In this document: positions 8,901-30,482 of the stretch, piece by piece
Position numbering within the stretch: the stretch's first letter is position 1
Layout of the letters: each line of letters starts with the position of its first letter
NCBI GenBank assembly: GCA_964035545.1
Contig: OZ037767.1
Coordinates: forward strand, 5,968,707 to 6,032,706
DNA: 64,000 nt
Direction of reading: 5' to 3'
Source of the DNA: Bugula neritina
Lineage: Eukaryota; Animalia; Bryozoa
Made by a program: the position numbers and the translations under genes
Notes under the pieces: model-generated
What the model was told of the DNA's origin: nothing
Databases searched by the model: none
What the model saw: the letters and a program-made list of their open reading frames with translations, nothing else

Positions 8901-10299
8901 TCAATTTATAACAAGTTTAATCATTTTTATGGGCTGCTGATTCATAAACATTGTGCTTGTATTGTATCAATCATTTTTACCAGTTATTGTTGCAGACGTT
9001 TTGTTAATAATGCACAAACATCATGTTTTTACTCAGCTGAACTTTGTTTAGGCAAATATTTCAGTCTTACTTGGTTCATTTTGAATAGAAAATAATGAAG
9101 TTACACAATTTTACAGACAGGCAAAATCCTTACACAACGTATGACTGTATCCTAACAAATAAATTAATTACAACACATAACAAATGTAAATCAACTGCCA
9201 TAAAATAGCCATTAGTTTTTCATTGACCCACAAAAAACATTTTCAACTGTAATTATGCTTGTCCATTTAAACTACACCATAAACTTCAATCTTAAATCAA
9301 AATAAATCAAGCAAATCAAATTAAATTTAGTTCGAAGTTACTCATGTGTACGCTAGGTATTACTAGAATGTTACATTAAAATCCAACTGGAATGCAAAAT
9401 ATAGGTGAAGGTAAATGAAGTGTTTCATTATTAATCCCTAGAAGCCATCACTGTTATCAGCCTATAGTTTCTATAGCTGTTGAACCAACAACAAAAAGCA
9501 GAGCCCGGTGGCTATTATTTTTCACAAATTATGGATTGCAGTTTCTCAAAATTCAAACATGCTTAAATTTTACTTTGCAATTTATGCTCTTAGATTTAAG
9601 CCAACGAGAATTTAAATGAAAATTAAGCAAACAATAATATGACATAGTCACAAGTCACAATCAAAATTAGCATTATAAAACTACCAGTCAAAGAATTGCT
9701 AAAAATATTCTAACATTGAGTTCCAGCATAATATGCAGCATCAATGTGTTCATATGATATAATAGTAATCACATTGATAATAATAATAAATATGATAACC
9801 ATATTCAATTTCAGACTGGTTTTCATATTCATAATGATAATGATGATAATTTTAACTTACAACTTAAAAGTTAAACTAAAGTTAAGTATTAGTACCGTAC
9901 TACTAGTAGTAGCACTAGCAGTAGTAGTAAGTACTACTACTAGTATTAGTACTAATAGTAATACTATTACTAATAGTAATAGTATTAGTATCAGACAATT
10001 AGTATTACATTTATTATAGCTAACTACAAGTACAGTGACAGCATGAGCAACTCTAAGAGTAAGACTAAGCTACTCACTAAGTCAGTTACTAAGTGAGTTG
10101 CTAAATATATTAACTGTAAGTTTAACTTAAATTTTTACTTTAAGTTAAAGTTTAACATTAAGTTGAAGTTGAAGTTTAAACTTAAAGTCAAATATTAATA
10201 TAAATAATATCCAATTTGAATTTAATAATATTCTTATAGTTATTCTATTTTTAACAACAAAATCATAAATTCATCTAATTTCTTGATAAAAAAATGACT

Positions 10300-11310
10300 T
10301 GACTCACTCAGTATATTTCACTTTAAAATGCAAGAAATAGCTGCAAGTTCTCCATTGTGTCCTTATAGTTATTCCAAACGTTGATCAGTTAGTTGTGGTG
10401 CAGACTGTGATACTGATAGTGATTGTCATTTCAACTATCGACTATTCCTCTCTAATGACAAAACGGAAATGATTTAGTTTAGACGAGCCCCATAAAGCTT
10501 TTTGTGGCTTAGTTAGTGTAGATCTGAATGGACAAATCATTATTCTTGAGTCGCGTATTATAAAAACATTGACCAATCATTTGCCTGTTAACAAAATTCT
10601 AGCTACAACGGTTCATGGTTCATAGAAAGTTTATATAGTGCTATGGCTACAAGAACACAAGTCATCACTAAAAAAATAAACGTGGTGTCTAGTCTAATTC
10701 ATAACAATTTGTCAAATAGTTAATAATCATAGCCATAATGATAATGTTTATTAAAATTTTTCGTTTCCTAACAGATATTTTTTAAAAGAAAACAACAACG
10801 TGAAAATTGAAATTTTTAATTTTATTTATCTCTAATACTAATAGTAATCATAATGACTAACAGTAAAACTAAAAGGTGAAAAGTAAAACTAAATGTAATG
10901 CTAATTATGATACTAATGCTAATAGTACCAGTTACAGTGAATGTGATCATTACGTGTAATTACTTACTAGCCTTAATTTTACAGTTTGAGTAACTCAGTA
11001 ATTTACGGGGTTTAATATTGATAGATTAAATGTACTAATGTCAATGTTATGTCTAATTGAGCAATTGTTGTTCTGACAACATAGAATTATTTGACAGTTA
11101 GAGGTTAACAGACAATGAATAGTGACGATAATCACAGTGATCAAAAGAATATAAGTTGAGAAAGATAAAAAGTATTTTTAAAACCAACACTTTAATAATT
11201 TTATTGAAATGTTGAACCTCAACCTGGTGAGTCAGGTGACCGTACTTATAGTTCGTTATGGTATTACTATTATAATACACAACATTTGCAAATATTTATC
11301 TGTAAGTCGT
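10300..11310. promoter_or_regulatory. Probable divergent promoter/first-exon region for TMCC (-) and TTC23 (+)
   Basis: Lies between the head-to-head genes. Candidate minus-strand donor GTGAGT at 10307 and plus-strand donor GTAAGT at 11302; CCAAT at about 10574. Inferred from position only. Confidence 0.35.
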
Positions 11311-11487
11311 GCAGAATTTGTAATACTAATAAATCAGAAGTTAGTATTTTAAAACAAAAAATCGATAGTCAAATCAAAAATTTAGACAACGGCAAAACTA
11401 TTTTGCATCAAGTATTGTAAAAACTTTAAAATTAATTGTACAAAAGTATTTAAAAAAGACCCAATAAATGAAGTTTTGTTTTTGCCT

Positions 11488-12039
11488 TTTTAAAGAGATT
11501 TTTTATATGAATGTTTAATACGGTGAAAAGATATATGACATTCAAGCTCATACTGATTGGTTTACATGTTTTCATAACATTCATAGTAGTGTTAATTGTT
11601 AAACTAAATAAAAATAGTTTTATGTGGGTAACTATTATTGTAAAAAGGTGTTCTTATTTTTTGTGATGTTAATTACTTTAACTATGCATAATGATAAATA
11701 GTACTCTAAAATTAGAAATTGATATACACAGTCACATCACTCTCAGGTAATATTAAAGAATAATTTTAAAGAGATTTTTTATATGAATGTTTAATACGGT
11801 GAAAAGATATATGACATTCAAGCTCATACTGATTGGTTTACATGTTTTCATAACATTCATAGTAGTGTTAATTGTTAAACTAAATAAAAATAGTTTTATG
11901 TGGGTAACTATTATTGTAAAAAGGTGTTCTTATTTTTTGTGATGTTAATTACTTTAACTATGCATAATGATAAATAGTACTCTAAAATTAGAAATTGATA
12001 TACACAGTCACATCACTCTCAGGTAATATTAAAGAATAA
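11488..12039. repeat. 276-bp direct tandem duplication (11488-11763 and 11764-12039)
   Basis: Both copies run from ttttaaagagattttttatatg to aggtaatattaaagaataa and look identical by eye. Confidence 0.95.
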
Positions 12040-12449
12040 AGATGTTATGTACTCATTGTATTCATGTTTTCAACACTACACATTTTCATATTTTCCAGTT
12101 TAGAGGGTGTGAGTCCTAATTCCAGCAGAATTAATTTTAGCAAAAAGTTTTGTTTTCTACCTTTTTAGATCTGTTTGGATTAAAATCTGAAATACTTGTG
12201 ACTTTGTGTTAGAATTTGCATCTTTTTACATTTTCATAAACATTGTTTGAATTATCAACAAAAACGTCTGGTAAAAAGCATTATTTTTACTATTTATTCA
12301 TAATGTAGTGTGTTCTTTGACCCACTATGCTACATGCAGCTACTTTTGTTATCTAAACTTTTGAATTTTTTCTGTTTTTTCTTATTTTAATAGCAAGTGG
12401 TAATTTGACCGGTTTGTATTTTTAGTGCTAAAGAGATCCTACTGCCGGC

Positions 12450-15400
12450 ATGTCTAACTACAGTGAAGATGATGATTTTGAAGCCGAATCTGAAGAGGAT
12501 GTTGCCCTTTTAGAGGTGAATGTTTCAAAAAACAACCAACTATTAGAACGACAAGTCTCTGAACAGCCTTCTAGCCTTGGAGATGAAGAGAGTCTTACAG
12601 ATGAGATGGAGCTTCACGGGCGAGGCAACCGTATGAAGTTGAGTAACAAACCACCAGAAGCTCTACTCAGACAGTACCAGTATCAGATTGCACTTAGTCT
12701 GGAGGCTGGGAAGGTTAGGTTTCAGGAATCCTAATGTCAGACTTTACCTGCATTTGAAGTGTTGCTGCTTGTAGAATATTACAAACATATAAACTGCAAT
12801 GTATATGCATAACAATAATCTAATCAATTATTCAAGCGCAATAAAAGTTTTATATTTGTTTGTACTTTTTTGCAACAATTAAAAAGTTTTTAACTACTCT
12901 GAAGTATTTTTGGTTGCTATAATAATTTTGAATATGATTTTACAATTGCAAAAATTGTCCTTTTCATGAGTTTTATTTTATTAATTTTATTATATTGTTA
13001 TTTAGTTAAATTCACATTTATCCACTAGTTCATATTTTATTAAGTAGATACTATAAATTTTTTAGTAGTTTTATAAATAAGATGTTTCTAATATGTTATC
13101 TTTAGAATGACAGAGCAATAGAGGATCTAGTGAGATGTACAGCGCTAGCTAGAATCGTGTATGGAGACTGCCATTGGAAATATGCTGAATCTGAAGCTGA
13201 TTTAGCTAAAGGGTACTGGAAACACAAGTGTAAGCACAAAAGGTGTAACCTTTAATAAATGTCGGCAGTTGGTAGAATTTTTTATCAAGTATTTGAAAGC
13301 CTATGTAAAGCTGTGAGTACCGCTGGATTTGGAGTATAAATTGTGCTTCTCCATGACAGTAACATATACATATGAGGGCTCAACGTAGTCCAGAAGCAAT
13401 TGGACTGTTTTTCTCACATCCCCAATAGTCTTGTTAAAACGCATACGTCTGCAGTACTCTATCCCCCAAATCATCTATGCCAATACTTCTGTGACTCATC
13501 ATGACTAGAATTGGTCTAATTAATGGCTGTTGAAGGCCATTTAGTTTACATTGAATGCATCAGTGTTGACTATAGGAGGTATAGAGTGTTCATATCATTT
13601 TTATTGCAATTTAAACTTCCTACTTTTTAGCAATTGTAGCACGCATGACCACAATCTGAATGTTTTTTCTTTACTGTGTTTAATTTAAACAGTTATTTTA
13701 GCATATAGCAAGACAGGCGCTTGAAAAAATATATGATTCATAATATGAAGTTCTATTTAGAGGGATAACCTAGCAAAATATTTTATTTTATTTCTATAAA
13801 TGGTATTTTAATTAGAAGAAATATATGGTAAATTATGAGATCGTTAAACAACCTATTCTGATTTTGTATATATATCAACAATTTTCAGCAGCAGTTATTG
13901 AACTTTTATAGGTTTAAATTAAATCTATCATAATTCTTTATTAGATGTGCGGTGTCTATTAAACACAATGTATTATTAAATTCAAATTTTATTTTAATAG
14001 CAGAGAACTTGTAAGTTCGACCTTTACTGAGTAAAATCGAGAATATCGCTGCGTATTAGTTAAGGCTAAATTTTGCAAATATTGCTGTATATTAATATTG
14101 CGAAGTGTTGTGCTGTAGAAAACTCTGAAAAATCAACTTTTCACTTGTCCTATCACAAAGATACTAAATTATTATATTTTGCGCAGAAGTAGAAAATAAA
14201 CATACAAGTGAGAGCGCTGCACACTAGGTATGCACTGAAAATAGGTATCTTATAACATTGAATGTAGACCATACTCAGTCATTAAGTACAGTTAATTAAT
14301 TTTCAGTTGCACTGTATTAAGAATACATGCAATAACTAGCATCTGGTTCTGCATTTTTATAACTATAGTTTGATATTTTTAGAGTTTGTTGTTTTGTAGC
14401 CTTAGCACCACAAGCCCAGCAGCATGCCGAAGAGGCTAGAAACATAATGCTAAGAGTGGTGCAAGCTGGAGGGGCTCAAGAAGAAAGAGGCCATATTTAC
14501 AGGTTATTCTTAACTCTCTTATATATAACACTTAATGTATGTGTTGTCTATTCAATAAAACTGGTTTCAATGTGAAAGTTTTAGATTTCAAGTTTTTTTT
14601 AAACAAGTATGATCAATATGTTGTGTAATACATAGTACGTAATGCTACTGCTTTAAAAGAGAGTATAACTAGAAGTCTTATATTCCTGATATATCAATTT
14701 TAGTCCTTGCATAGTAAATAAATTTCTGTTCAAACATTTTAAGCATTGTATGTTTTAATTTGTTTGAATTAATTGGTAGTAAAAGTGCCAATATTAAGGG
14801 TTGTCTTTTCTACATTTTTTAAACCTCCAAGTAAATTCAATGGAATTGTCTTCTTTTTAAGCTCTGTATAATCCACTGTCATGTTGATGTATCTTTTAAA
14901 AGATGTTATTGCACAGTTATTTATTATTGTGCTAAACTTTTAAAAGCTAGCAAAACTTTGTATGCTCTCCGTATTATATCTACTATTACTTGTCAATATG
15001 GCAACTGCTAGTAGGTTCTGGTTTTTCACTCTCGGTGCAAAAAGGCAATGTTTCAGGCTCATAGGTGTGCATGTATATGTTTCTGTATGCACCTTCTTAT
15101 TAACCTACATTTCAGCAATTTGAACTAATTACAGCTTCAATAGTCTCAGTTTTATCTCAAAGTGACTGTTTACAATGATTGAATTACTTAAACCTGATGC
15201 TAAAGTCGAGTTTTCCCTCTCCAGAACTCTACTATCAGTGTACGTGACCCTCGGGGAAGCATACAACGCACAGCAGAAATACACTGATGCGGAGTTATGC
15301 TATCAAAAAGCTGAGAAGATTCTAGTAGAGCAGAGCAAACTTCAGCAGAAGTCTCTTTCCGGTGATGAGCAGGAATTAGACAGAGAGCTTAAATCTGAAT

Positions 15401-18400
15401 TGAAGATTGCTCAGGGCAAGTAAGTAAGCTGCAAGTGCTTGCCGTACTGCTACCTGCAGCCATCTGTCACAAGCTCTAAATGTTTGCATATCAAATGTCG
15501 GTAAAACCCTACTCACTATTAGATAACTCAGACGGAATTGAGAGAGCTCTTTCTGTGTGGAGTAAATCCTCGACTTTCGAGAATTTTTCAAATGGCTGTT
15601 AGAAAATAACAAACTAAAATAACTGAAAATAATCAAATACACATGTGCTCTATGAAAACTGTATTGTTGCTTTAACTTAAGCTTAGAATGTTACATGGTT
15701 TTTATTAAACGTATGATTAGGCATCACCTATTCTAAAATTATCAAAGGTAAGGAAATTGAAGCATATTTGATTAGCTTGCAAAAATTTTAAATAATAATT
15801 TAAGGACTAATTGATTAAGATGAGAAAATCCAATTTACACAGTATGCCCTTATGCGGCAGACTCAAAACTTATTTACTCTCGATTTTTTTAATTTTGTAA
15901 GATTCAAAATTTTTAGTACTTAAAATTTATTAGATGATGTATAGAACAAATTATATAATAATTGTCATAATTTAAACAAATTTTCGTATATGCCAAGATT
16001 TCATATTTATTCTTGCAGTAACATCACTTAAATTCATAAAGGAGTTAATTTGAGTGTTCTCAAGGAAGTAGGCATTAAGAATCTACTTAAAGAATTTGCG
16101 TCATTGTTTGTAATTAAATTCAAGTAGTTACAAAAATATAATCATTAAATATGCTTTATTTTTCACTTTGACTGCCCATAGCATTGTGTTGTTACCAATC
16201 ATACATTGCTAAACCTGTTAATCTGAATATTTTATATTATAAGCACCTTTTTGTTCGTCAGACAAACATCTGTTATTTTATTAACAAGCAAGTTTTACTA
16301 GAAACTGTGGTTTGTAATGTAGGATTAAATTTTGGATTATATCTATTAACTCCTTTTACTTGAGGTTACATCATGTTGTATTCAAATGTCAATGTTAACT
16401 GTGAGTTGAAGAGTGTTGTTTGTGTCAAACAAATCTTTACATTCAATCCATTGTTTATCAATATCAAAAGTTAATCAGTAATAAACATTAGTCATTTCCA
16501 AAGTGTCAAATTGCAATACTGAAGAATTTTTAGTCAAAATTTTTACTGGTTCCATTAGGGAATGTTTTAATATATTATGCTTCTCGTAATTTACTTGTAA
16601 GAATAAATTTTACACAAAATATATGTGATTTGTTGGGAAAATGGTTAATGAGCACAAGTTATAGTTTTCATTAAACCGAATTTATTTGCAACTGGAAATG
16701 GATTTTTTTATTCTTTTACAAAATAAATTGCTGACAAGTTGAATTCTATGTTTGGTTAGGTTGGCAGCAAACCAAAACAAAGCTGCCTCTAGTATCGCCT
16801 ACTTTGAAGAGGCAATTGTTTTGCTGCAAGAAGAATACGGAGATGATTCCATCAAACTGATTCCCCTCTACCAGATGGTTGGTAAGGTAGAGCAGAGTAG
16901 GGAAGGCGTAAACCACATCAAAAGTATTGAAGCTTTTCTTCAAGCTCACTCTATAGCCAATGCCAAGTAAGTTTCATTTGTAATTATGTCCCCTGATCTC
17001 CTCTACTTGTATAGCAATATTATTATGTTTGTGCACGACAGTATGTACACTTGCTTTACATTTATTTATAAATAATAATAATTGAGATAAATAGTGTTCT
17101 TAGATGAAAATAGCATGTCTTTTACAAGGGTCTGAACTCTTTACAGCATACCATTCTTTATAGTTGATGAGTAGTGCAAATGGGTAAGGGCTCACCTCAG
17201 ACTGCAAATATGGGTGTTGTAAGGGTTTAGACACTGAATCCTAGATTGTTTCTATTAATATATAAGAAGCATGCTCTATATTGGTAATTACTCTACCATA
17301 TTCATGCAGCTTTGATCTCTAATCACTAAGTCATGTGTAGGTATATATATTTCTGACAGGAGAAGTCAAAAATGTTTAGTTATGAAGCTTCACTGTCTGA
17401 TGGAACTAATAAGTTAATTTTCATATTCCAATTTTTATTGATCAAGACAAAAGTGTTGTTCCCACATACACTCGTTCCTTGTATAGGTTTTTGCAAAAGA
17501 AAGTAAAAATGTTGACTTACAAAATGCAGGATTACAAGAGTTTTCTTTTTTGTGTCCACTATAGTGCCATTATATGTAATGTAGTATTTGGTGAGAGAGC
17601 CTTTGCTCAATTTTGGAATGGTAAAATTTACTTATAAAATATTAGAATGGCAATAAATGAAATGAAATAAATTACGTATGTTTTCTAATGTTGACTTGTA
17701 GTTTTGGCCAATACTCCACCATGTTTTCTACATGCAGATGACAAGCACCGAATTTTAGTTGCTACTATTATATAATGACTACACAAATATTAGTGTGTTC
17801 TTTGCTTTTATATGCAGCATTGTTACAAAACACCAAGAGTTGTTTTCTTTTCTTTGTTGTATATCTTGGAGTTGTCTTATGTGAAAGTAGTTTCTTGTTT
17901 GGGAGGTATCAAAGTTAAGCATTTGTTTGTGCTTCAAATTTGAAAACCTTGTAGATTACTCATGATTACATATGTCATGATATGATAACGATTACATATT
18001 TTATAGCAACTGTTTTAGTTTACTATCACGATAGCCTTCTGGCTTCAAATTCAAATTGATAGTAAATTTCAAGAGATAGATTACCTTTTTTTTAAAGTTA
18101 TTTTTCTTTACAAATGATACTTGATCAATCTAGGCCAATCAATAAATTTAATGTAGAACTAGAAGTAGAGGTTGACTAGAAGTAGGTGTAGAACTAGAAG
18201 TAGATATTTCATGTTTCTTCAACTTCAGCTTGAGCTTCAAGTTCAAGTTGAACTTGAGCTTCAAGTTCAAGCTTAAGTTAAAATTAAAGTTAATATTTAT
18301 GATTATCCTAATTTTCAAGTGTATCATAAAGTAAAAGTTATTCAGTTGAACTTAATCATGCCCATGGTCACTATCATGGTGGTGATTTTAGTAAGACTGA

Positions 18401-21400
18401 GACTCAATATGAATAAGTATAACTTTGAGCAGAAGCTCGAAGTCTAAGAATTACTCAAAGTTAAAAATATACTACTGTTGGTTTTAGTTTCAATATTCAT
18501 AATTTGATTATAAAATTTCAAGTTTAGTAAATATTTGAAGCCTAAATAGTTTAACTTGATTAAACTTTAAAACTAATGAAACTAAAAGCAAAAAATAAGA
18601 GTTAAATTTAAATTAAAAAGAAACATAACTTTAGGTCATTATGATTAAGTTTAACTTTAAGCCTAAAGTTAACTTTAATTTCAAGTGAATAATAAGCTCT
18701 AGATGATTTATTTAAGTTTATTAGTTATATAAATAAATATTTGTTGACTGCATTCTTTTTCTCAGTAAGTTATATTTATAATTGTAGTTATGATAAATTA
18801 ATTTATATGTCATCTTGAATTTAATGCAAAATAAATATTACTATTTATATTATAGTGTTCCTTAGTGCTACTTGTTTTATGAATATGATGATCATGGTCA
18901 GTATGACTATAATTCTAAGTTGTCTAAATATAACTTCTATTTGCAATCTATACATGTATCATGATATTTTTCATTCACACCAATACTAATAGCTATTACT
19001 TATAAGCTTTTGCTTCAAGTTTATATTAATACTTAGTCTTATTATTTCAGTGGATTATTTGAACACTCTCAGTATAACATTAACGGTGTACATCGCTGTA
19101 TAGATTACATTTAATAGCTTAATTATTAGTATTAGCTTTAAGTATAAGTTTTAGTTTGAGTATAACTGTGAAGTTGCCTTTATACCTTCATGATTTTCGG
19201 TCAGAATTTCAATTTGGCCGGGTTGAAATTTCACCGAGTTGAAATTTCACCGAGTTGCATTGCATTGTAAAAGCCACTCGTAAAAATTTTTGTACTGTGA
19301 TAAGCCTAGGCCCACCTTTGCTACTTGTGATTTAAATTTTCGCATGCGAAAATACGTGCAGTGTGGCCCTAGGCTAACTTAATCGGCCAACTTTAGAATA
19401 GGGGTAATAACTCCTTGTAAACATCGTTATTTAGTTATTACTTTGGCGATTAGACAACGTACTTATACGGTTATAATTATATAGCCTACGCCTTCTCAAT
19501 TATCGCTTTTATCCTGTCCGCTTCACTAATTCACGATGTTTACAAAGGGCATTAAATAGCTATTATGCGAGTCAAATTTCAATTTCAGAAAGTGAGCAAC
19601 CGCATCAATATGATTTCAACGAGTTTCAGTTTGACTATAAAGTGGTACCCGGGCAAGCATTATTAACTTAAACTCGGTACTTTTTGCAGCAGAGGTATAA
19701 ACGTAACTTAACTCTGGTGCGTTATAAAAAAGACATCAATATATCTTTCAATACATGAAGTCTATCAGACTATAATATATTTTATAAATATGGCTGAAAT
19801 AGCATTAAGTATGCATTGAGTTGTTGTTTACTTTTATTCATTAGTTCCCTTAGTTTTAGTTCATTTTGGAGCAAGGTTAAAGTTCACCACATTAGAGGCT
19901 GTGACTATATATATTTGTTTGGTATCTCAGCTTTCATTTCTCTTCTCACATTGTATCTTTGATACCCTTGCTTACTCTGCTACTTTTATCTTCTTGTACT
20001 CTATCCTCAGTGTGAATATCATTATCTTTTCAGTATCAGCTAATACTTTATTAAGAAAAGTTGCTATATTTTGTTGTTTTTAATTTGGCTATCCTAGATT
20101 TTCCAGTAATAAATTAACTATATTTGATTTAGGGATGGCCTATTACCCCTTATTGAGTCTTGCCTCTGTAGTTCACAATAATGACGAGTCATTTAATTTG
20201 ACTTAAGTATTACATGGGCCAGTTTGTATGGGACTGATGTATAAAAGTTTCCCTGTGTTCTGGTGTTGATAGTAACAGAAAGTCTCTTAGGTTCTTTTAC
20301 TGCATTAAAATCAACTGCATGCTATCAACTCTTTTGTCTAAGAGTTCTACGTTTCTTACAAATTAAAAATAAAACTTCTAAGCAATGGAAATTTATTATT
20401 TAAATAATGATTTGCAAAATTCAGACAAATATAAGTTTTCATGTGCCAGTCTCTAGTCACATGGCTACCTGTTTGGTTTCCAGATTGTTGGAGTTACATT
20501 CTCTTTACAGTTACAGTGAAGGCACAGAAGAACTAGCAGAGACTGGTCACCAACTGGCTTTAGCATACACAAGAGCAGCTGTGGAAGATAAAGATGCTGA
20601 AAGTAAGTATTCAGAGTTGTCTTCTCCTTCAGCTGCTTTACTGATATTCTAAAATTAATTCACTCTCCATTTAAAGCTGGCCATTAAAATCAAATTCAAT
20701 TTGGATGTCTGTTTCAACAAAATTGTAAAACAAATGTATTTGTTGAAAATATATGTCCACTAAAGTTAGATCAACTGACATTAATTCTGTCTTTGTTTGC
20801 CAAGTATATGTAAAAACCATGTTAAACATCATCATTTAATGTTTCTGTTATTGCATTAGTTTATGGATTGACTCAAGGAAATTTAGTTTCGAAATACTGC
20901 CTGGCATCTACACAAAACTCTCTTCATTTATTATGTAAAACTATTCTCAGATCTTTATTATTATGTTTGTTAGTAATTTTTAGTTTGATTTCAACTTTAA
21001 TACAAAATAAAGTATTATAGACGCAGAGAACATAAAACATATCAAATACAATCAGCTGCATCACATGAACCGGTAGTTGAAGGATCATCAAAATATTCTC
21101 CCTCCATTATTCCTTCTAATCCTACCACAGCAGATAATCTCTCTTATACGGTGATTAATATTCATCGTGGTTAATAAGGTTAAGGTGGTAATCCTGACAT
21201 TGCGTCACTCGGGCCTGTCCCGTATACCTAAGCTACACGTAGGCTTTAGCTGCACTTTTTAGGTTAGGTGAGATGATATCAAATAGTGCCAATCTATATT
21301 ATGATTTTATATTGTGCACTTTTTCAGGTGTTAATTTATTTTTACTACTAATTCCATCATACATAGGTGGAATAGGGCCTTATGTGGACAGTTACTCAAC

Positions 21401-24400
21401 ATTCATTTTTAAATATAAGTTTTCTAACCATTTACACATTCTTGCATATGAATACGTGTTTATTCAATATATACATATACTGCTACATATTAACAGAGGT
21501 GAGTTGGTGGATAGATTACATGTATAAAATCCGCTGTTCAGAATAAAAATATCTGTAATAATGAATAATGAGGTGACAATCTATGTTCAGTAACCTTTGT
21601 TGTTATTTAAAATGTTGCCATCATCAAATTTATGGTATTGGTTGATTCAACATTGGAATGGTAGAAACTGTCCATTGTAGTAAAGACTGGAATATAAGAG
21701 CAAATACTTTAGTAAATATTTTATCTCATCTATTTCTATATGAAATTTATATTTTATAAATAAAATTATATTAAACTCCTTTTATACCAAATGTTTATAT
21801 AATTACTTTCTGTGTCATTTTATATCACAGCACTAGTAGTTTAGTGAAACTAAACTTTTTGCTTACAACCTGCTTTGTTATAATATGTGTTATAATATAT
21901 CAGAACAAGTCAGGTAGGGAAGGACCACCACACCTCCCCCCCTCCCTTCTCTATAGCTCACAAAACTTGTATAGTTATTCTGATCTATGGCCATAATCCT
22001 TAGAGCAAGCTCAGTTAATAAAATTAGTGGTAAACTTTTATTTGTTTAATACTGTTTATTTAATGATTTTATGGAATAAAATGAAAGTGATTTGGTTTAG
22101 ATGAGATATTTTCAAAGGATTGAATGGTTGCCCAAATGTTCCATATATCACTGAAATGATACACTTATAGCACTTGGCCCTCTGATAAGATTCCTATTAG
22201 TTGCCTGACCACATATTTTGTAACGCATTAACTGTTCTACAAGCCCTTTTACACTTTACTACCATTAAGAGACACATAAATTGGCACCTTAAGGTGTTGC
22301 ATTAAAATTATCTGACCTTATTATCAAAGTGAAAAAATTTTAATGTCACATCCCCTCAATAATTGCTTAATATTATGTATTATATTGTGTTATTTCGGTC
22401 TTGTAGCATCTGCAGAGAGCTACTTGAATGAATGTATTGCCACATACCTATCTCTATATGGACCCAATCATGAGAAAACCCTTCGCTGTCAAGATGAGAT
22501 TGCTCGGCTTATGATTAGAACTGACCGATCTGATGAAGCCATTCAGGTCAGCTTCCCTACTACCCTCCCACTACCTCCTCTACCTCTCCTTCCCTCCCAC
22601 TACCCACCACCTCTCACTTTCCCAGTTATACAGCGTCACTATACAATGGCAAAGAGATGTGAATTTTATTCACATTGTGTTCTCTTTTAAAGATTAGTTG
22701 AAATATTAGTATAAAACATAATATATTAATGAACAAATTTCTTATGAATTTTTAGTAGCTCGTCACACTGAAAATGTTTAATTTTTTCAGTTTGGTCAAA
22801 GAAATATGTTTGATTTCAACTTTTCTCGAGAAATTATGCAATTAAATGTGGAATTTACACATCACTGGGTCATCATCATAGCAGTCTGTTTTTGTTTTGG
22901 TTTGATCCCACATCTTCATCGCCTCTATATTTAGCCTTCTTCTGCCAGCAATTTCTATCCATACCAATCTTCTTCATAGTTCTTCTTACAGTGTCTTTAA
23001 ATCTCAGTCTGGGCCTTTCTGGGTTACATTTCCCTTCTTTCAGCTGTGAATAAAGGAGTTTTCTAGGTACTGCAGTGTATTCAATCACGTCTTTTTGAAA
23101 TTAAGATCAATTAAACTAGCTTATTGTTCTGAAGATAAACTGTATTGTCTGTTAGAACATTTTGTTCAGTGCCAGTATCTGATTTTCTCTTGCAGCTGCT
23201 AAGATCCACTTTACCAGCTAAGAGGGAAACGTTTGGTGAATATTCACAGAGTCTAGCCTCTACTTATAAACTACTCGGATCTGTTCACATGTCGCAAGGC
23301 AACATGGAAAAGGCTTTAAAGTCTATGAACAAAGTAAGAATTATAGACCTTGATTATGTTCTTCCTGATCACATCCCTCCTATTGCTACTCACTACTTCC
23401 ATGTTGTACACCAGTCTGTAGAAAGTTTATAGAGCTTTAAAGGAGCAGGTAATTAAGGCTTTACACCATTACTAGCATTATCCATGAAATGGTATCAAAT
23501 TCGAATTAGTAGAAATTTCATCACCTGTTTAAACCATTATTGAGCAATTAAACAATTCCTGCTTAGGAAAGTATACCAAGTTTTCTTCCCTGTCATTTCG
23601 AAGTAGCTTTTTAAAACTACAGACATTTTCAGCTTTGAGAGCGTGCTTTCGGAGCAATAAAAGGTAAGATGAAAGTTGGTGGGGTTTCTGGTAAGTTGAA
23701 GTGTGTTGTCAAGCAGGCACGTTACTGAACCTCCATGACTAGTGCCGTATTTATAGGAGCTGAGTGAAGCCGAGCTGCAGTATAGAACTCTTCAACAGCA
23801 GCACCTATCTCAGCTGCAAAATGCTTTAGAAGAAAAAGATAAGCAGCTCGCGGATGGAAAAGCACTTTTCAATCAGCTCAAAAATGATTTTAAATACAAT
23901 TTGAGGCTTTTGCAAGAAAGAGACGATGAACTGCAACAAAACGATGTCACAATAGCCCAATTACGAGATCAGCTCAGTCAGCAACTGGAGCAGGTCAGCC
24001 AACTTGGCATCAAGTTACAGGAAGCCAGTGAAAATGGTGCAAAATTGGAACAGGCTCTTTCTGATAACGAAAAGAGATTTCATAAGCAGCTACAAAGTGA
24101 CCGAGCTGATTTTGACAAAAGGTTTAGTGAAAAATTATCAGAATATAATGCTGAGCGGTTGGAATGGAACTGCCAGAAAAGGGCTCTGGAAGAGAATTGC
24201 AAGGTAACATGTGTTAATTGATTTTACGAAATTTACTAGTTTGCTTAGTATCTCGTCTCATCAGTTTTCTCCATCAAGTGTTGATAGCAATCAAAGTTTT
24301 TAATGCATCTGCATTTGATCTCTTGAGTTATATGTTCTCATTACGTAGGCCACAGCTCATTGCTTTATTATAGCATGGTCTAGTGATAATCCATCATATA

Positions 24401-27400
24401 TTCATCAAATTCGTAAATATTCTGTGATCTGTGGTGTCTCAGTGCTTTGGCTTATTTGACATAAATTCTAGATGTTATTCAAACCCTTTTGAAGATTTTT
24501 CCATGAATCACATCTATAATAGCAAAAATATGGATTCATACTGTTTACAATGTTGTGTGTGGTAGTTAAAACTATGAACAAGTAAATTGCTTTTTTCTAT
24601 CAACATGTGCTTAATGACAAAAATTAACGTTTTGTAGATTTTTAGTTTTTGTATAGAATTGCCGGCCTGTTTTCTTTTTACAATAATTTGGTGCTGAGCA
24701 TTATTTTAGTGTAATGTGCTTATATGTAAGATGTTCATCAAGTTATTCAAATATGAACTAAACTTGTTAACTCAACTTTTGCTTTTGGCAAATTTTTTTA
24801 AGATTCATGTTGCATGTGCGTAATTGCATTACAATAGCTTCGATAGGTTTGTTAATGTTTACCAGTGTTCCTCATATGCAGTGCTGTTGATAATCATAAT
24901 ATTTCCTGCACACGTTTTCATTAAATATAGCTGGAAATAACCATTGTAGATATCTGAGGAGAAGCGACTGGCTGAAAAGAGAGAAACACAGATGCTGTTT
25001 GAAGAACAGCTTGCATCTAGAGAAAAAGATTGGAAAACAAGAATAGAAGAGCTTGAAATGCAAGCATTGAGCCATGAGCTTCGTGCAACATGTTTGACTA
25101 CTGAAACTGAAAAACTCAGGGAAGACAGAGTTAAAAAGTGTCAAATTGTAGAGAATGCTGAAGGAATGCAGCGTCAACTTGAGAATAAGTTGAAGCAAAG
25201 TAAGTGGGAGCTGGAGGACTATCGTGGGATGTGCACACGTAGGATTCAAGACCTCGAGTCTCAAATCGCTCACACAGAACAATCGCAGAAAGCATTAGTA
25301 GAAAAATATGAACGGAAAATTATTCAATGTGAGGCTAGACTTCAGGAAACAGTTGAGCGACACGAGAAGGTCGCGTGTAGTCATCAAGACAAAGTTAACA
25401 CTCTGAATAGTGCTATAAGGGAGCTAAAGGATGCACTCTCAAACAAAGAGACTGATCTTGCTAAACTCGGCTGGAAAGTAGAAGATCTGGTAACCGAGCG
25501 GAACAAGCTGGTGGAGAACCATGTTTTAGAAAAGTCAAAACTTCAGAATGAGATCAAAACTTTAGAGTCTAAGAATGACTCTAATAGATTAAAAGAAGAA
25601 GTAACTTATTTGAAGAACTGCTTAACGGAATTGAAGGAGGAAGTTGCATCACAAAAGGTTTCCATAGAAAATTACCAAGCCAAGCTAGCAGTGGCAGCTG
25701 ATGAACTTTCTGAAGCAGACAGGCAGCGTGCAAAGTTAGAGCTTGATTGTCAGCAAAGATGTCTGCAAATAGAACGTGAGCAGCATAAAAAGTCAGAAGA
25801 CCTTATTTCTCGACTTTCTCAAGCTAAGGACCGTGCTGAGGTAACAGTCAAACGGCTGGAAAAAGAAGCAAATCTGCATCAGCAAGCTATTAATGAATTA
25901 AAAAAAGAGAGAAACAATGCATACAACACTCTTGCTGCTCACGGTATTGCTTTAGCATTTTCAGATGTAAAGTCTTCTAGTAACTCAAATGTTACACAAT
26001 CAGAGGTCACACAACTGAAGGCTCAAAATGACAACCTGAAGAAAGTGGTAGCTCAAATGAGACAGGCTGCGGAACATGAAGGTTCTTCGAATCCTTCTGT
26101 CTATTTCAACCAATCACACATATATGTGAAAAGCTTAGAAGACGAGATAACACAATTGAAGCAGCAAGTTCGAGAGAAGGAAAGAGCAGCTATGGCAGTG
26201 GCTCCAGCAACTAGTGATTTGGTCAACTCTGTTCTTTCAGCCGGAGATGCTGGTGTACAGAAGGTTGTGGCGTCACTAAACTCAGATATAGCGGCATTGC
26301 GATCTGAGAAAGTGAGCTTGACGGCTGCGAGTCGAAAACAGCAAATAGAAATAGAACAGCTGAAATCAGAATTGCACAAGCTTGAGATGAGTCCAAAGAA
26401 CATACAGGTTGAGTTAGAGCAATGTCGTTATGAACTTAACTCAGTCTGTAGACGTTTCGAACATGATGGTGCATCATACAAGCAACGGATTGGAGATTTG
26501 GAGAAGCAGTTAGAATGTACTCGTGAAGAGGCTGCTGAATATCACAAAAATTTGCTTTCAATGAATGCTGAAAACCAGGCACTCTCAACCCAGCTGTCCA
26601 ACCTTAGTATGCTGCAAGCTAGATCTGGTAGTGCCATCAACTACGGCGCTCAGGAGTTGGTTATTCAGAACTTACAAGATGAGGTTAGCCAACTTACATG
26701 CTCTTTACACTCTGTTCAAAAAATATATGATTTTTAGAACTGTTTCAATATTTTCTAATGATATACTCAGATCCTATAACTAAATGTTTAGTTTTTCAAA
26801 GTTTCAAAAATATTAAGATAGCTTTTGCTGTGTTAACTTTCTGATTAGACGACTTTCTCATTTACACATCTTTAATAAATTTCATACCAACTTTGAATAC
26901 GTATGTTATTTGAGTAATAAAAAGTATGTTGATCACTTGATAAAATACCTTAACTATGAGGAAAGCATTTTGCTGTTCAGTAAGATGTTGTATTTATTCT
27001 TATACAGAATGCTAGATTGCGGAACTTGGTAAAAGACAAATCAGAAGGAATTGATGGTAGTAAAGAACTCTCAAAAGCACTGTCTCAAGTAGTTCAATTA
27101 AAAAAGGAAAAGATTGTTTTAACAGAATTAAGCAACAAATTGAGATCAGAGCTATTAAAAACAGGAGTTGATCCTCATAGAGTTAATGAACCAGCTCATA
27201 AAACTATTTCGAATTTGGGTTCTGCAGCTGTTCAAAGAGATTTACCAAGCAACATAAAAATGGCTGAAGCTGTTTCTAGCAAATTGCATCAATTAGAAAA
27301 CATCCAGTATCAGTTAACGAAGGCAAAAATAAGTGGAGTATCGCAGAAGGAGAAGAAGATTGCAGATTATACTCAAACTTCACCTCCAACTAAACAAGTG

Positions 27401-29220
27401 AAGTCTGTTAGCTCTGGCTTAAAACCAAAATCAGCTCGTCAGCAGTTGCCCAAATATGTAGAGCAAACATCTTCCAGCAGTTCTTCTATAAAAGCTCAAG
27501 GAGAGTCTAAAGTTTTACAGCCGCCAAACTTTGATTCGCAGCCCAAATATTCAGCTCCATACCCAAGACCTAAATCCAAGTCCAACTTACCATGGCTAAA
27601 CAATAAGAAACTGGCTAATGATAGAAGATCCAAAGAAAATGTTCCTTCACGAGTTTCTGTTGATCATAGTAAATCCCTGGAGAAATCACTGGTGGCTAAC
27701 AGTACACTAAATGGTGGTATGCCTCCACTAGATTCCATGGACTTTGGATCATCCATAAATGAAGTGTGGAAGCTGGTTGATGGGCAAAATAGTCCTGACT
27801 CTACATTCCCTGAGTGATATTTTATTCATAAATATTTGTTGGATTTTGCTGATAGTTTAGTGATTTAAATTATGCTTCAAGCACGCCACAATGTTTTTTT
27901 TATTCTATAAAGTTTTGTAGTTTCAACTTGTATATTAATCACTGCGTTTTCAATCAATAAATTTAATGGTTAGATGAATTTAATGTGTTCAGATGTTTAT
28001 TTAGTTCGTTGGTCACTTCTACAAGTCAGTCATACTCTATAAAATTCCATTCCACTGTTGCTAATCAAGTATTATGCATCATATTAAATGAGGTATTTGT
28101 AGCGCCCTGGTGAATAATAGTTGTATGCATACAAGCGGATTCAAGAAAATGTATCAGTCAGTTGATCATAAGAAAAAACGGAAGTGAGCAAAGATCTCAA
28201 CAAGATAGTGTGACTGGTGAAGCACATGTCTGCCTTGTAGAAAGCTTGTTAGCTAAATTTAGAATCCGATGGACATATAGATACCACACCTTATTTCTTT
28301 TACAGCCTACATCTTTTTACACTCAATTAACCCTGACCTTATAATTCATTTTGTAATATGTGCTTCGATTTTCATGATGATAAATCTCACATTTCGCAAG
28401 CTAGTGTTATAAATTTCAGATTATGGCCCATCTTACCTACGCCATGGTAAAGCTTTTAAGAATGTTAACAATAAAAAGATCATTTTACATCTGTCTAGTA
28501 TGGATAAACATTGAGGATTATGATGTTGCACTCTGTCACTTTCTGTACAATAATCTGTTTGTTTTGTTATAACGTAAACTTCCATATAAACTACTTCGTC
28601 TGTAGCAATATACTTATTTGGAACAAAACAATGCGTACCCATGCTTGGATGAATATCCTACCCTATAAGAACCAATAATGATGAAATATCTTATTGATTC
28701 TAGATTCTCCAACTCCATAGTCACATGAGTTGATAACTTTACACAATAAATTTAATTTGTATAAATTAATGCATTTTTTGTAAAAGTGCTGTAATAGCTG
28801 TTCAAGGCAGGGTTTTGAAATTTGTCCCATTATAGCATTCTTACTGGGTTATAGTACAAGATGTTTGTATCATATGGCTTTAAAAGTGTGCAAATTTTCT
28901 TTACAGATCATTATATATTAATTTAGTATATTAATTTGAATCCTAAACATATCCATCAAAGATGGTACTTTTTAAAAGAGCAGTTTTCTTATGTGTTGAT
29001 TTTTAATTTTATTTAGTGCTTAGAAGTGCAGACCTTTTTATATGGAGCTAAAAGTCGGAAAGTAAAGGAGACGCAACAAACAATAGACGTGCTGATGTCA
29101 GATCCTCAGCTAGCTGCAAAGGTATCTCAAGGCAAAATCAAGGAACTTTCTGCAAGGCCAAGATTTAACACCATTGTTAAAGGACAGCAGAATTTGGGCG
29201 GTTTCAAAGGGTGTTTCTGA
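12450..29220 (+). CDS. TTC23: Tetratricopeptide repeat protein 23-like, 9 coding exons, about 488 aa
   Basis: Exons 12450-12713, 13106-13229, 14400-14502, 15225-15419, 16760-16966, 20511-20602, 22407-22546, 23196-23333, 29017-29220. All are GT-AG and phase-consistent. Motifs DLVRCTALARIVYGDCHWKYAE...QAQQHAEEAR and KCLEVQTFLYG match TTC23/TTC23L. AATAAA at 29711. Confidence 0.88.
19181..19699. mobile_element. Putative non-autonomous DNA transposon (about 520 bp) in TTC23 intron 5
   Basis: Termini TATACCT...AGGTATA. Subterminal ACCGAGTT occurs twice at left (gttgaaatttcaccga tandem) and inverted (AACTCGGT) at right. Richer in CpG than its flanks. Confidence 0.45.
22860..23090 (-). mobile_element. 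5'-truncated RTE-clade non-LTR retrotransposon relic
   Basis: Translation PRKLLYSQLKEGKCNPERPRLRFKDTVRRTMKKIGMDRNCWQKKA resembles the RTE ORF C-terminus, followed by a short (ATG)n tail on the minus strand. Confidence 0.75.
23757..27817 (+). CDS. CCDC57: Coiled-coil domain-containing protein 57-like, nested in TTC23 intron 8; 3 exons, about 996 aa, start codon unresolved
   Basis: Exons 23757-24203, 24950-26683, 27008-27817, all phase 0. Motifs LKNDFKYNLRLLQERDDEL, QALSHELR and LELDCQQRCLQIEREQHKKSEDLISRLSQAK match CCDC57. Own AATAAA at 27956-27961. Confidence 0.85.
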
Positions 29221-30482
29221 CAGCTGTCCATGTGATCTTGATTGCTATTCGCTGAATTTTTGCAAAGCTGATGACAATCTTAATAGAATATATACATTCC
29301 TGTAGTTTGGTATTTTAATCTCACCTAATCTACTAACTGAAATCTCTACACTGACAGGGTTTCTAATCTTGGATGTAGCTGCAAAATGGGCAGATGTATT
29401 TTCATACTTTTTCAAGTTCTTTGCATGTATAGCCTACACTTTATAGTGTTTATACCTTGTTTTATTAGGTTATTGAAATGATCCAGGTGTGTTGTGTTTT
29501 TGATAGATCCAGTGGTACTAGTTTAATAGATTTTAAATTATTATCCGTTTGATTTATAGTGGCATTATGGTTATGAGTCTACAGGCAGTTAAACATTTTA
29601 TTGTTGTTACTAATCATTACTAATATGCTTGATAGTCGTCCTCAAATGGTTAATATTTTCACTATTTGTCTATCTCAAAGCATATTTTTTTCAAGTTAAT
29701 AATTAATTGTAATAAAAATAGTCTAATATAGCCAGATTATTTATTTTAATACCATTTAATTTATATTTTGTGTGACATTGTCTGTGAAATAGTAATAGAC
29801 TTGGAATAATATTAATTCTCCACTAAAACCCACCGCAACGAAATTAGAAAGACTCAGGCGAAGTTTCTGTTTGTTTTATTTTTTGCAAGAATATTTTAAT
29901 GGTGGTTTTTATTCGGTAAAGTAGGGCAGTTACTGATTGCTGCTTCTTAAGAACTAATCACTTGTTTAATAACATACTGCATGGCGTCTTGTAAAAATGA
30001 TATGCTTGGCTGTTTTATATGTTTTTAACTACTTTTCCAACTTTTAATGACGTTTTGAGAAGTCATTAAATAAGCATAGATATTTCAGTTTTCTTGCATA
30101 GACAATAGAGAACTACTTTAATATTTAAGGAACTGTAACAGGTGCTCATTAGCTTTGTGAGGTAAAGAAATGTGTTGGCGTAAATTGCTGAAGTTGGCGA
30201 GTTAGGACTCATTTGCTAAATAAGTTTAATAAGTGAGTAATTAGAGTATCTCCCCATGAGTTTATATGGTAACTTTTGTGCCACCAGGTGGTGTGAGTTT
30301 TGTTAATTATACTTGATTAAAATATTTTGCAGCTCATTAGGTTTAAGTTGTTCAACCCTTTAAAGTATTGGGGTGGATGTCAGGGTGTAGATATTACTGT
30401 GATGAATGCTCTTGTATATTGGAGTACAGGTTTCTAGGCGTATATTTCAAGAACAAGATGACGGCTAAGATAACTTCTCTGG

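What the first reader, a model, noticed from the sequence alone, without database searches (positions are those of the whole stretch)
23196..29220. CCDC57 nested on the same strand in the last TTC23 intron, in phase for a TTC23-CCDC57 chimera
Seen: TTC23 exon 8 ends at a phase-0 donor (AAA|gtaaga, 23333). Both the first CCDC57 exon (ttatag|GAG, 23757) and the TTC23 terminal exon (atttag|TGC, 29017) are phase-0 acceptors, and each route has its own AATAAA (27956, 29711). To make TTC23, the transcript must skip three CCDC57 exons and a poly(A) signal. Using the nearer acceptor gives an in-frame protein of about 1417 aa (421 aa TPR region plus 996 aa coiled coil). Known: nested genes are mostly antisense to the host; mammalian TTC23 is ciliary, CCDC57 is centriolar, and they are unlinked in human. 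Inference: alternative last-exon choice could couple or fuse two cilium/centriole proteins.
Basis: partly seen in the sequence, partly recalled or inferred. Interest (0 to 1): 0.85.

Follow-up and report, generated by a model that had tools for sequence, protein, structure and literature searches.

The report
CCDC57 nested inside a TTC23-like gene
In the bryozoan Bugula neritina the only CCDC57 gene (a basal-body protein) lies, on the same strand, inside the last intron of the only TTC23-like gene and its large exons have no start codon, so it must borrow one by splicing, from a tiny private first exon, from the host gene (giving a fusion protein), or both.

Summary

- **Organism and genes:** the window is from Bugula neritina (a bryozoan). 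The inner gene is a true CCDC57 orthologue. The host is a TPR gene; I could not test whether it is TTC23.
- **Conservation:** the nesting is found in three more bryozoan species, and both genes are single copy here.
- **New point:** the first large CCDC57 exon has no in-frame Met in Bugula and no conserved one elsewhere, yet it is conserved from its first codon. The start must therefore come from an upstream exon.
- **For fusion:** two species have no possible private ATG exon. Watersipora subatra's annotated gene starts at the TTC23 Met and has a 1425-aa product; 1417 aa is predicted here.
- **For independence in Bugula:** the only conserved island in the exon 8 to CCDC57 interval is CATTAC…GAAATG|GTAT, shared with a relative (shuffles p=0.0014). 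It looks like a private first micro-exon ending in the start codon.

My reading is a nested gene with two routes. No RNA evidence could be obtained, so the fusion is strengthened but not shown. I rate it of moderate interest, as a new member of known kinds.

The parts
12450..12713 (+). TTC23-like exon 1 (start ATG, 88 aa, donor AAG|gttagg, phase 0)
   Evidence: ORF and splice sites. Conserved in L001 and in Watersipora L012, where the annotated gene starts at this Met.
13106..13229 (+). TTC23-like exon 2
   Evidence: Conserved block between the window and L001; phase chain.
14400..14502 (+). TTC23-like exon 3
15225..15419 (+). TTC23-like exon 4 (TPR)
   Evidence: Pfam TPR_1 at E=4e-5; conserved in L001, L012 and L015.
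16760..16966 (+). TTC23-like exon 5 (TPR)
   Evidence: Pfam TPR_12; 77-81% identical in L001, L012 and L015; single copy in the genome.
20511..20602 (+). TTC23-like exon 6
22407..22546 (+). TTC23-like exon 7 (TPR, donor phase 0)
   Evidence: Pfam TPR_12 at E=6e-7.
23196..23333 (+). TTC23-like exon 8. It ends in the first helix of a TPR; donor AAA|gtaaga, phase 0.
   Evidence: TPR_1 profile positions 1-22 of 34 reach the exon end. It is 83-89% identical in L001 and L016 and 67% in L015.
23436..23442 (+). TATA-like TTTAAAG, 26-32 nt upstream of the A of CATTAC
   Evidence: Read by eye. L016 has TATATC at -34 to -29 of its own CATTAC. Weak evidence in AT-rich DNA.
23467..23491 (+). Candidate private first micro-exon of CCDC57: initiator-like CATTAC, a short leader, then GAA ATG followed by donor gtatca
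   Evidence: It holds the only ATGGT in the 423-nt interval. It shares the 10-mer GAAATGGTAT and an upstream CATTAC with the only ATGGT in the 1639-nt interval of L016. Shuffles give p=0.0014 and 5e-5. The introns are otherwise saturated. After splicing the context is GAAATGGAG.
23757..24203 (+). CCDC57 exon C_e1 (149 aa, no in-frame Met, TAG immediately upstream, phase 0 at both ends)
   Evidence: It matches residues ~12-160 of named CCDC57 proteins. The acceptor is at the same codon in 6 bryozoan contigs.
24950..26683 (+). CCDC57 exon C_e2 (578 aa)
   Evidence: It aligns collinearly with Argopecten-type CCDC57 residues ~160-780. Single copy.
27008..27817 (+). CCDC57 exon C_e3 (269 aa plus TGA)
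27956..27961 (+). AATAAA, 139 nt after the CCDC57 stop
29017..29220 (+). TTC23-like terminal exon (67 aa plus stop). It completes the TPR begun in exon 8.
   Evidence: It is 72% identical in L001 and 66% in L015, and lies downstream of the CCDC57 exons in both.
29711..29716 (+). AATAAA for the TTC23-like mRNA

Best explanation
This is a bryozoan-conserved locus. The single CCDC57 gene sits on the same strand inside the last intron of the single TTC23-like TPR gene.

The three large CCDC57 exons encode 996 aa but carry no initiator. Translation has to begin in an exon spliced onto the conserved phase-0 acceptor at 23757. Two donors can supply that exon.

1. **A private micro-exon** (about 23467-23491) ends exactly in ATG. 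A small promoter in the intron would drive it, giving an independent 997-aa CCDC57. I take this to be the main route in Bugula.
2. **The phase-0 donor of TTC23 exon 8** (23333) gives a 1417-aa TPR + CCDC57 fusion that ends at the CCDC57 poly(A) site. I take this to be a second isoform in Bugula. It is the only route I can see in at least two other bryozoans, and it is the annotated product in Watersipora.

The TTC23-like protein itself (488 aa) is made when exon 8 skips all three CCDC57 exons and their AATAAA and joins the terminal exon at 29017.

**Shown:** the anatomy, the conservation, the missing start codon and the conserved ATG|GT island.
**Inferred:** which junctions are actually used.
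For: **Anatomy and open frames:**

**CCDC57 orthology**
- C_e1 hits named CCDC57 proteins of about 870-1070 aa, at their residues ~12-160.
- C_e2 is collinear with them.

**Nesting conserved:** seen complete in L001 and L015, and from T_e8 to C_e1 in L016.

**No usable start in or near C_e1**
- A stop or a Met-free stretch lies upstream in frame in all six contigs.
- The first downstream Met is at varying positions (22, 37, 77, 104) or absent.
- The first codons EL[ST][ED]A are nevertheless conserved, with synonymous changes and AGT/AGC versus TCT/TCC serine codons.

**Private-exon route**
- The window and L016 each hold a single ATGGT in the interval. The two share GAAATG|GTAT and an upstream CATTAC (p=0.0014 and 5e-5 in 20,000 shuffles).
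- Plus-strand and minus-strand k-mer sharing is otherwise equal, so the introns are saturated.
- The element is single copy in the genome.

**Fusion route**
- The donor and the acceptor are both phase 0.
- L001 (284-nt interval, and also introns 6 and 7) and L015 (201-nt interval) allow no ATG exon with a phase-0 donor.
- In Watersipora subatra, the gene next to TMCC starts at the TTC23 exon-1 Met. Its longest product is 1425 aa, with TPR as its only Pfam hits.
- No NCBI protein of 318-1011 aa matched C_e2.
Against:
- The micro-exon donor GTATCA is weak, and a uATG lies 5 nt upstream of the ATG.
- The micro-exon is absent from L001 and L015.
- The TATA-like and initiator-like features were found by eye in AT-rich DNA.
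- I could not fetch the Watersipora 1425-aa protein. It did not appear among the C_e1 hits of the representative search, which I cannot explain. A predicted model may also join genes without transcript support.
Confidence: 0.4

Rival explanations
1. Obligate fusion. Bugula has no independent CCDC57 mRNA. CCDC57 exists only as the alternative 3' module of the TTC23-like gene (1417 aa), chosen by splicing at 23757 plus intronic polyadenylation. The ATG|GT island is some other regulatory element.
For: - Phase match and open frame.
- No private start is possible in L001 or L015.
- Watersipora has a 1425-aa product.
- No standalone bryozoan CCDC57 protein was found in range.
- The intervals are short and intron-like: 201-284 nt in two species.
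Against: - The conserved GAAATG|GTAT island with an upstream CATTAC is shared by Bugula and L016.
- All 120 best CCDC57 proteins of other phyla are 505-1146 aa, with no sign of a fused TPR part, so an N-terminal TPR is not the family norm.
- The fusion would cut a TPR repeat in half.
Confidence: 0.28
2. Purely independent nested gene. CCDC57 always uses its own promoter and first exon. The in-phase host donor is a coincidence (1 in 3), chimeras are noise, the Watersipora 1425-aa model is a prediction artefact, and the other species have first exons that I missed.
For: - The conserved micro-exon candidate.
- CCDC57 is standalone in other phyla.
- The 1425-aa protein was not recovered.
Against: - L001 and L015 have no ATG exon with a phase-0 donor: from exon 6 onward in L001, and in the exon 8 to C_e1 interval in L015.
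- A strong host donor lies 424 nt upstream of a used acceptor, which makes some chimeric splicing hard to avoid.
Confidence: 0.2
3. Spliced-leader trans-splicing. The acceptor at 23757 receives a shared leader whose 3' end supplies the AUG. CCDC57 would then be cut out of the host pre-mRNA (or a private outron) without a cis-spliced first exon.
For:
- The acceptor is conserved, with no start codon behind it.
- Acceptor-like sites lie just upstream of the TTC23 and TMCC ATGs in this window.
Against: - The leader sequence is unknown to me.
- To my knowledge, a leader that donates the AUG is known only in flatworms.
- I found no literature on trans-splicing in bryozoans.
- It does not explain the conserved ATG|GT island.
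Confidence: 0.12

Closest known systems
CCDC57 (coiled-coil domain-containing protein 57) of other animals
   Same: Collinear similarity over about 1000 aa, including the N-terminal KxDFKYNLxLLxERDxEL block, NYGAQELVIQ and the C-terminal LQYQLT block. Named orthologues occur in molluscs, echinoderms, hemichordates, brachiopods and vertebrates. Literature: a basal-body/centriole protein needed for coupling basal-foot and axonemal orientation (PMC11599927).
   Different: Elsewhere it is a protein of roughly 1000-1100 aa with its own Met 10-20 residues before the EL… motif. In Lingula no TPR host gene overlaps it, but that contig lacks the 5' end. Here the body has no Met and lies inside another gene's intron.
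TTC23 (TPR protein of the ciliary EvC zone)
   Same: A TPR_12/TPR_1-type repeat protein of about 490 aa. Mammalian TTC23 is a TPR protein that binds IQCE and EFCAB7 at the EvC zone (bioRxiv 10.1101/156059).
   Different: Orthology was not tested here.
Same-strand nested genes and alternative terminal exons / intronic polyadenylation giving chimeric proteins
   Same: The inner gene lies wholly in one host intron and has its own poly(A) signal. The host must skip it. An in-phase donor and acceptor allow a composite mRNA.
   Different: The inner gene's main exons cannot be translated on their own, and the arrangement is conserved across deeply diverged bryozoans (C_e2 is 40-57% identical). In some of them the host exons appear to be the only source of a start codon.

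Membership tests
CCDC57 orthologue | N-terminal conserved block (…KEDFKYNLKLLEERDxEL…) matching named CCDC57 proteins | tested here: met
   phmmer hits at E 1e-10 to 1e-7 to proteins named CCDC57 in Argopecten, Antedon, Strongylocentrotus, Glandiceps and Arion.
CCDC57 orthologue | Collinear similarity along the whole length | tested here: met
   C_e2 aligns to residues ~160-780 of P0017 with 60 invariant columns. The blocks shared by C_e3 and the C-terminal part (LQYQLT, S.Q.VW.L.D) were read by eye, where MAFFT did not place those rows under the C-terminal columns.
CCDC57 orthologue | Own initiator Met shortly before the EL… motif | tested here: inconclusive
   There is none in C_e1. A candidate ATG-only micro-exon lies at 23489-23491.
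TTC23 orthologue | TPR repeats through most of a ~450-490-aa protein | tested here: met
   Pfam TPR_1, TPR_12 and TPR_10 hits in exons 4, 5, 7 and 8. The model is 488 aa.
TTC23 orthologue | Best reciprocal similarity to named TTC23 proteins | not tested
   The exons are too short for the length-filtered search, the joined protein was not searched, and the Atlas gave only generic TPR clusters.
Same-strand nested gene | All coding exons of the inner gene lie within one intron of the host, on the same strand | tested here: met
   The same holds in L001 and L015.
Same-strand nested gene | Own promoter and first exon | tested here: inconclusive
   A conserved CATTAC…GAAATG|GTAT island occurs in Bugula and L016. 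It is absent in L001 and L015.
Fusion gene by alternative 3' module (intronic polyadenylation) | In-phase junction between shared 5' exons and the alternative module, with an open frame | tested here: met
   Phase 0 on both sides; the 1417-aa frame is open.
Fusion gene by alternative 3' module (intronic polyadenylation) | Transcripts or proteins containing the junction | not testable with these tools
The only indirect evidence is the 1425-aa annotated product in Watersipora.
Spliced-leader trans-spliced gene | A shared leader joined at the acceptor | not testable with these tools

The most novel reading that the evidence does not exclude
In bryozoans CCDC57 lost its own first exon when it landed in the TTC23 intron. 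Since then it has been made, ancestrally and in most lineages only, as a TTC23-CCDC57 fusion. That would be a Rosetta-stone fusion conserved across bryozoans, and it would predict that the EvC-zone protein TTC23 and the basal-body protein CCDC57 work in one complex at the ciliary base in animals generally.
Probability: 0.3. Interest if true: 0.7.

Novelty: new member of a known kind. Interest (0 to 1): 0.5.

Why it matters
Same-strand nesting is uncommon because the host's splicing and polyadenylation tend to trap the inner gene. Here the trap is in frame, it is conserved across bryozoans, and the inner gene cannot be translated without an upstream exon.

If fusion transcripts are real, one lineage has physically joined two proteins of the ciliary base that lie on different chromosomes in humans. 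That gives a testable hint that TTC23 and CCDC57 act together. It also provides a natural example of how a nested gene becomes an alternative 3' module of its host.

If only the private micro-exon is used, this is an ordinary nested gene. The practical lesson is then for annotation: a one-codon first exon, and a likely mis-fused model in Watersipora.

Tried and rejected
**RNA evidence**
- Read laying was not used, because it needs run ids from that tool.

**Other sources of a start codon**
- Other ATG exons with a phase-0 donor in the interval exist only at implausible donors, or 10-82 nt from the acceptor.
- In-frame read-through into C_e1, or an internal Met, is excluded or not conserved.
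- An apparent small exon about 90 nt upstream of C_e1 (shared by L005 and L006) has lengths of 31, 37 and 42 nt with in-frame stops. I left it as an unexplained conserved element.
- There is no second copy of either gene.
- The ATG island is not a multi-copy leader gene: it is single copy.

**Searches that did not help**
- A profile search with an Argopecten CCDC57 plus the bryozoan exon-2 rows, meant to catch the 1425-aa Watersipora protein, returned only non-bryozoan CCDC57.
- Both Atlas searches gave generic coiled-coil or TPR clusters.
- The Lingula contig lacks the 5' end of the gene.
- The Pecten isoform and the window's own TMCC protein are not on record.
- The Watersipora genome is not in the searchable genome collection.

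Only their lengths and open frames were computed from coordinates.
Full report
**What is in the sequence.**
- A TPR-coding exon (23196-23333) ends AAA|gtaaga in phase 0.
- Three coiled-coil exons follow on the same strand: 23757-24203, 24950-26683 and 27008-27817. They encode 149+578+269 = 996 aa plus a stop, and AATAAA lies at 27956.
- A further exon (29017-29220; 67 aa plus stop) has AATAAA at 29711.

I rebuilt the upstream TPR gene from conservation and splice phases. Its eight exons begin at 12450 and sum to 421 codons.

All searches were exon by exon, by reference.

**Identity.**
- A single-exon TMCC gene at 4443-5972(-) is 99% identical to EB796_021913 of Bugula neritina, so the window is from that bryozoan. 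The older assembly's contig ends inside the TPR gene, so it has no model there.
- The inner gene is CCDC57. Its first exon matches residues ~12-160 of proteins named CCDC57 in scallop, crinoid, sea urchin, acorn worm and slug.
- Exon 2 aligns collinearly with residues ~160-780 of such a protein.
- The host has TPR_1/TPR_12 hits in exons 4, 5, 7 and 8.
- Exon 8 ends after the first helix of a TPR repeat, and the terminal exon continues it. So exon 8 joined to 29017 is the natural host mRNA.
- I could not test whether the host is the orthologue of TTC23 (one search gave only generic TPR clusters).

**Conservation.**
- Contigs of other bryozoans from metagenomes and public runs show the same order on one strand. 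L001 (also L002, L003, L014) and L015 carry T_e8, C_e1, C_e2, C_e3 and then T_last. L016 (also L005) carries T_e8 and C_e1.
- Host exons are 61-89% identical to the window, and CCDC57 exon 2 is only 40-57% identical, so these are deep divergences.
- The acceptor of C_e1 sits before the same codon (EL[ST][ED]A…) in six contigs.
- Both genes are single copy in the 216-Mb genome.
- In Lingula no TPR host gene is annotated over CCDC57 and no terminal TPR exon follows it. That contig lacks the 5' end of the gene, so the upstream side is not seen.
- The 120 best CCDC57 proteins of other phyla are 505-1146 aa.

**The start-codon problem.**
- C_e1 has no in-frame Met, and a TAG immediately precedes it.
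- In the other species the upstream in-frame extension ends in a stop without a Met. The first downstream Met is at codon 22, 37, 77 or 104, or absent.
- The first codons are nevertheless conserved as protein, with synonymous changes and both serine codon families.
- Full-length orthologues have 10-20 residues before this point.
- The start must therefore come from an exon spliced onto this acceptor in phase 0.

**Evidence for the host as donor (fusion).**
- Exon 8's donor is phase 0 in every species.
- In L001 (interval 284 nt, plus introns 6 and 7) and in L015 (interval 201 nt) no ATG exon with a phase-0 donor can be drawn.
- In Watersipora subatra the same TMCC neighbour is present. The annotated gene beside it begins exactly at the homologue of the TTC23 exon-1 Met and runs beyond the fetched 10 kb. 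Its longest product is 1425 aa and carries only TPR Pfam hits. The prediction here is 421+996 = 1417 aa.
- No NCBI protein of 318-1011 aa matched exon 2, as expected if Watersipora's CCDC57 exists only inside a longer product.

Caveats:
- I could not fetch that protein.
- It did not appear among the hits to C_e1, which I cannot explain.
- A predicted model can join genes without transcript support.

**Evidence for a private first exon in Bugula.**
- The 423-nt interval has one ATGGT (ATG 23489-23491, donor gtatca).
- The 1639-nt interval of L016, a closer relative (81-89% aa identity), also has exactly one.
- The two share the 10-mer GAAATG|GTAT and a CATTAC 8-16 nt upstream.
- In 20,000 shuffles a shared 10-mer around an ATGGT occurred in 0.14%, and with a shared upstream 6-mer in 0.005%.
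- Shared k-mers are otherwise equally frequent on both strands, so the introns are saturated and this is the one conserved island.
- TATA-like words lie about 30 nt upstream of CATTAC in both species. Splicing would give GAAATGGAG, a good initiation context.
- The element is single copy, so it is not a leader gene.

Weak points:
- The donor GTATCA is poor.
- A uATG lies 5 nt upstream.
- L001 has CATTAC…ATG followed by TA instead of GT, in four independent assemblies.
- L015 has nothing comparable.

**Third possibility.**
I could not check it. If a leader ending in AUG were added at 23757, neither of the routes above would be needed. To my knowledge AUG-donating leaders are known only in flatworms. 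I found no paper on trans-splicing in bryozoans.

**Verdict.**
- The mechanism is most likely a two-route locus. In Bugula a private one-codon first exon gives an independent nested CCDC57. The in-phase host donor gives a TTC23-CCDC57 fusion, which seems to be the only option in some other bryozoans.
- Against what is known, this is a new member of known kinds (nested gene, alternative terminal module, Rosetta-stone fusion). It links an EvC-zone protein (10.1101/156059) with a basal-body polarity protein (PMC11599927).

Noticed in passing
window 4440-5972 (-): A single-exon TMCC-family gene (510 aa, PF10267), 99% identical to Bugula neritina EB796_021913. An acceptor-like site (tgtag|GC) lies 2 nt before its ATG. 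Its adjacency to the TTC23-like gene, in divergent orientation, is kept in Watersipora subatra.
   Followed up: partly
window 12380-12450: An acceptor-like site (ttttag|TGCTAAAG) lies 24 nt upstream of the TTC23-like ATG.
   Followed up: no
window 22876-23088 (-): A 70-aa ORF in intron 7 (…PERPRLRFKDTVRRTMKK…) looks like the C-terminal tail of a LINE-type retrotransposon protein.
   Followed up: no
window 11450-11942: Two near-identical ORF pairs about 276 nt apart (11511-11666 and 11787-11942, identical 51-aa translations) point to a tandem duplication upstream of the TTC23-like gene. AT-rich low-complexity tracts lie at about 9700-11200 and 18150-18950.
   Followed up: no
L005:1270-1300, L006:170-200, window 23632-23672: A short element (…ATATTC..GGTCGTATGCTC… in L005 and L006; …GCAATAAAAGGTAAGATG… in Bugula) lies about 90 nt upstream of the C_e1 acceptor and has donor-like and acceptor-like edges. 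Its lengths are not multiples of 3 and it has in-frame stops. Its function is unknown.
   Followed up: partly
window 23735-23756; L005, L006, L007, L001 at the same place: A conserved TGAC(T) about 20 nt before the C_e1 acceptor in all species is probably the branch point.
   Followed up: partly
L016:3437 onward / L005:1532 onward; L015:6041-6369: Lineage-specific extra introns: one inside C_e1 after …LRLLQ in the L005/L016 species, and one splitting C_e2 in L015.
   Followed up: no
The 1425-aa Watersipora product did not appear among the representative-library hits to C_e1, although much weaker full-length CCDC57 proteins did. Either it lacks that exon, or it is not represented in that library.
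   Followed up: partly
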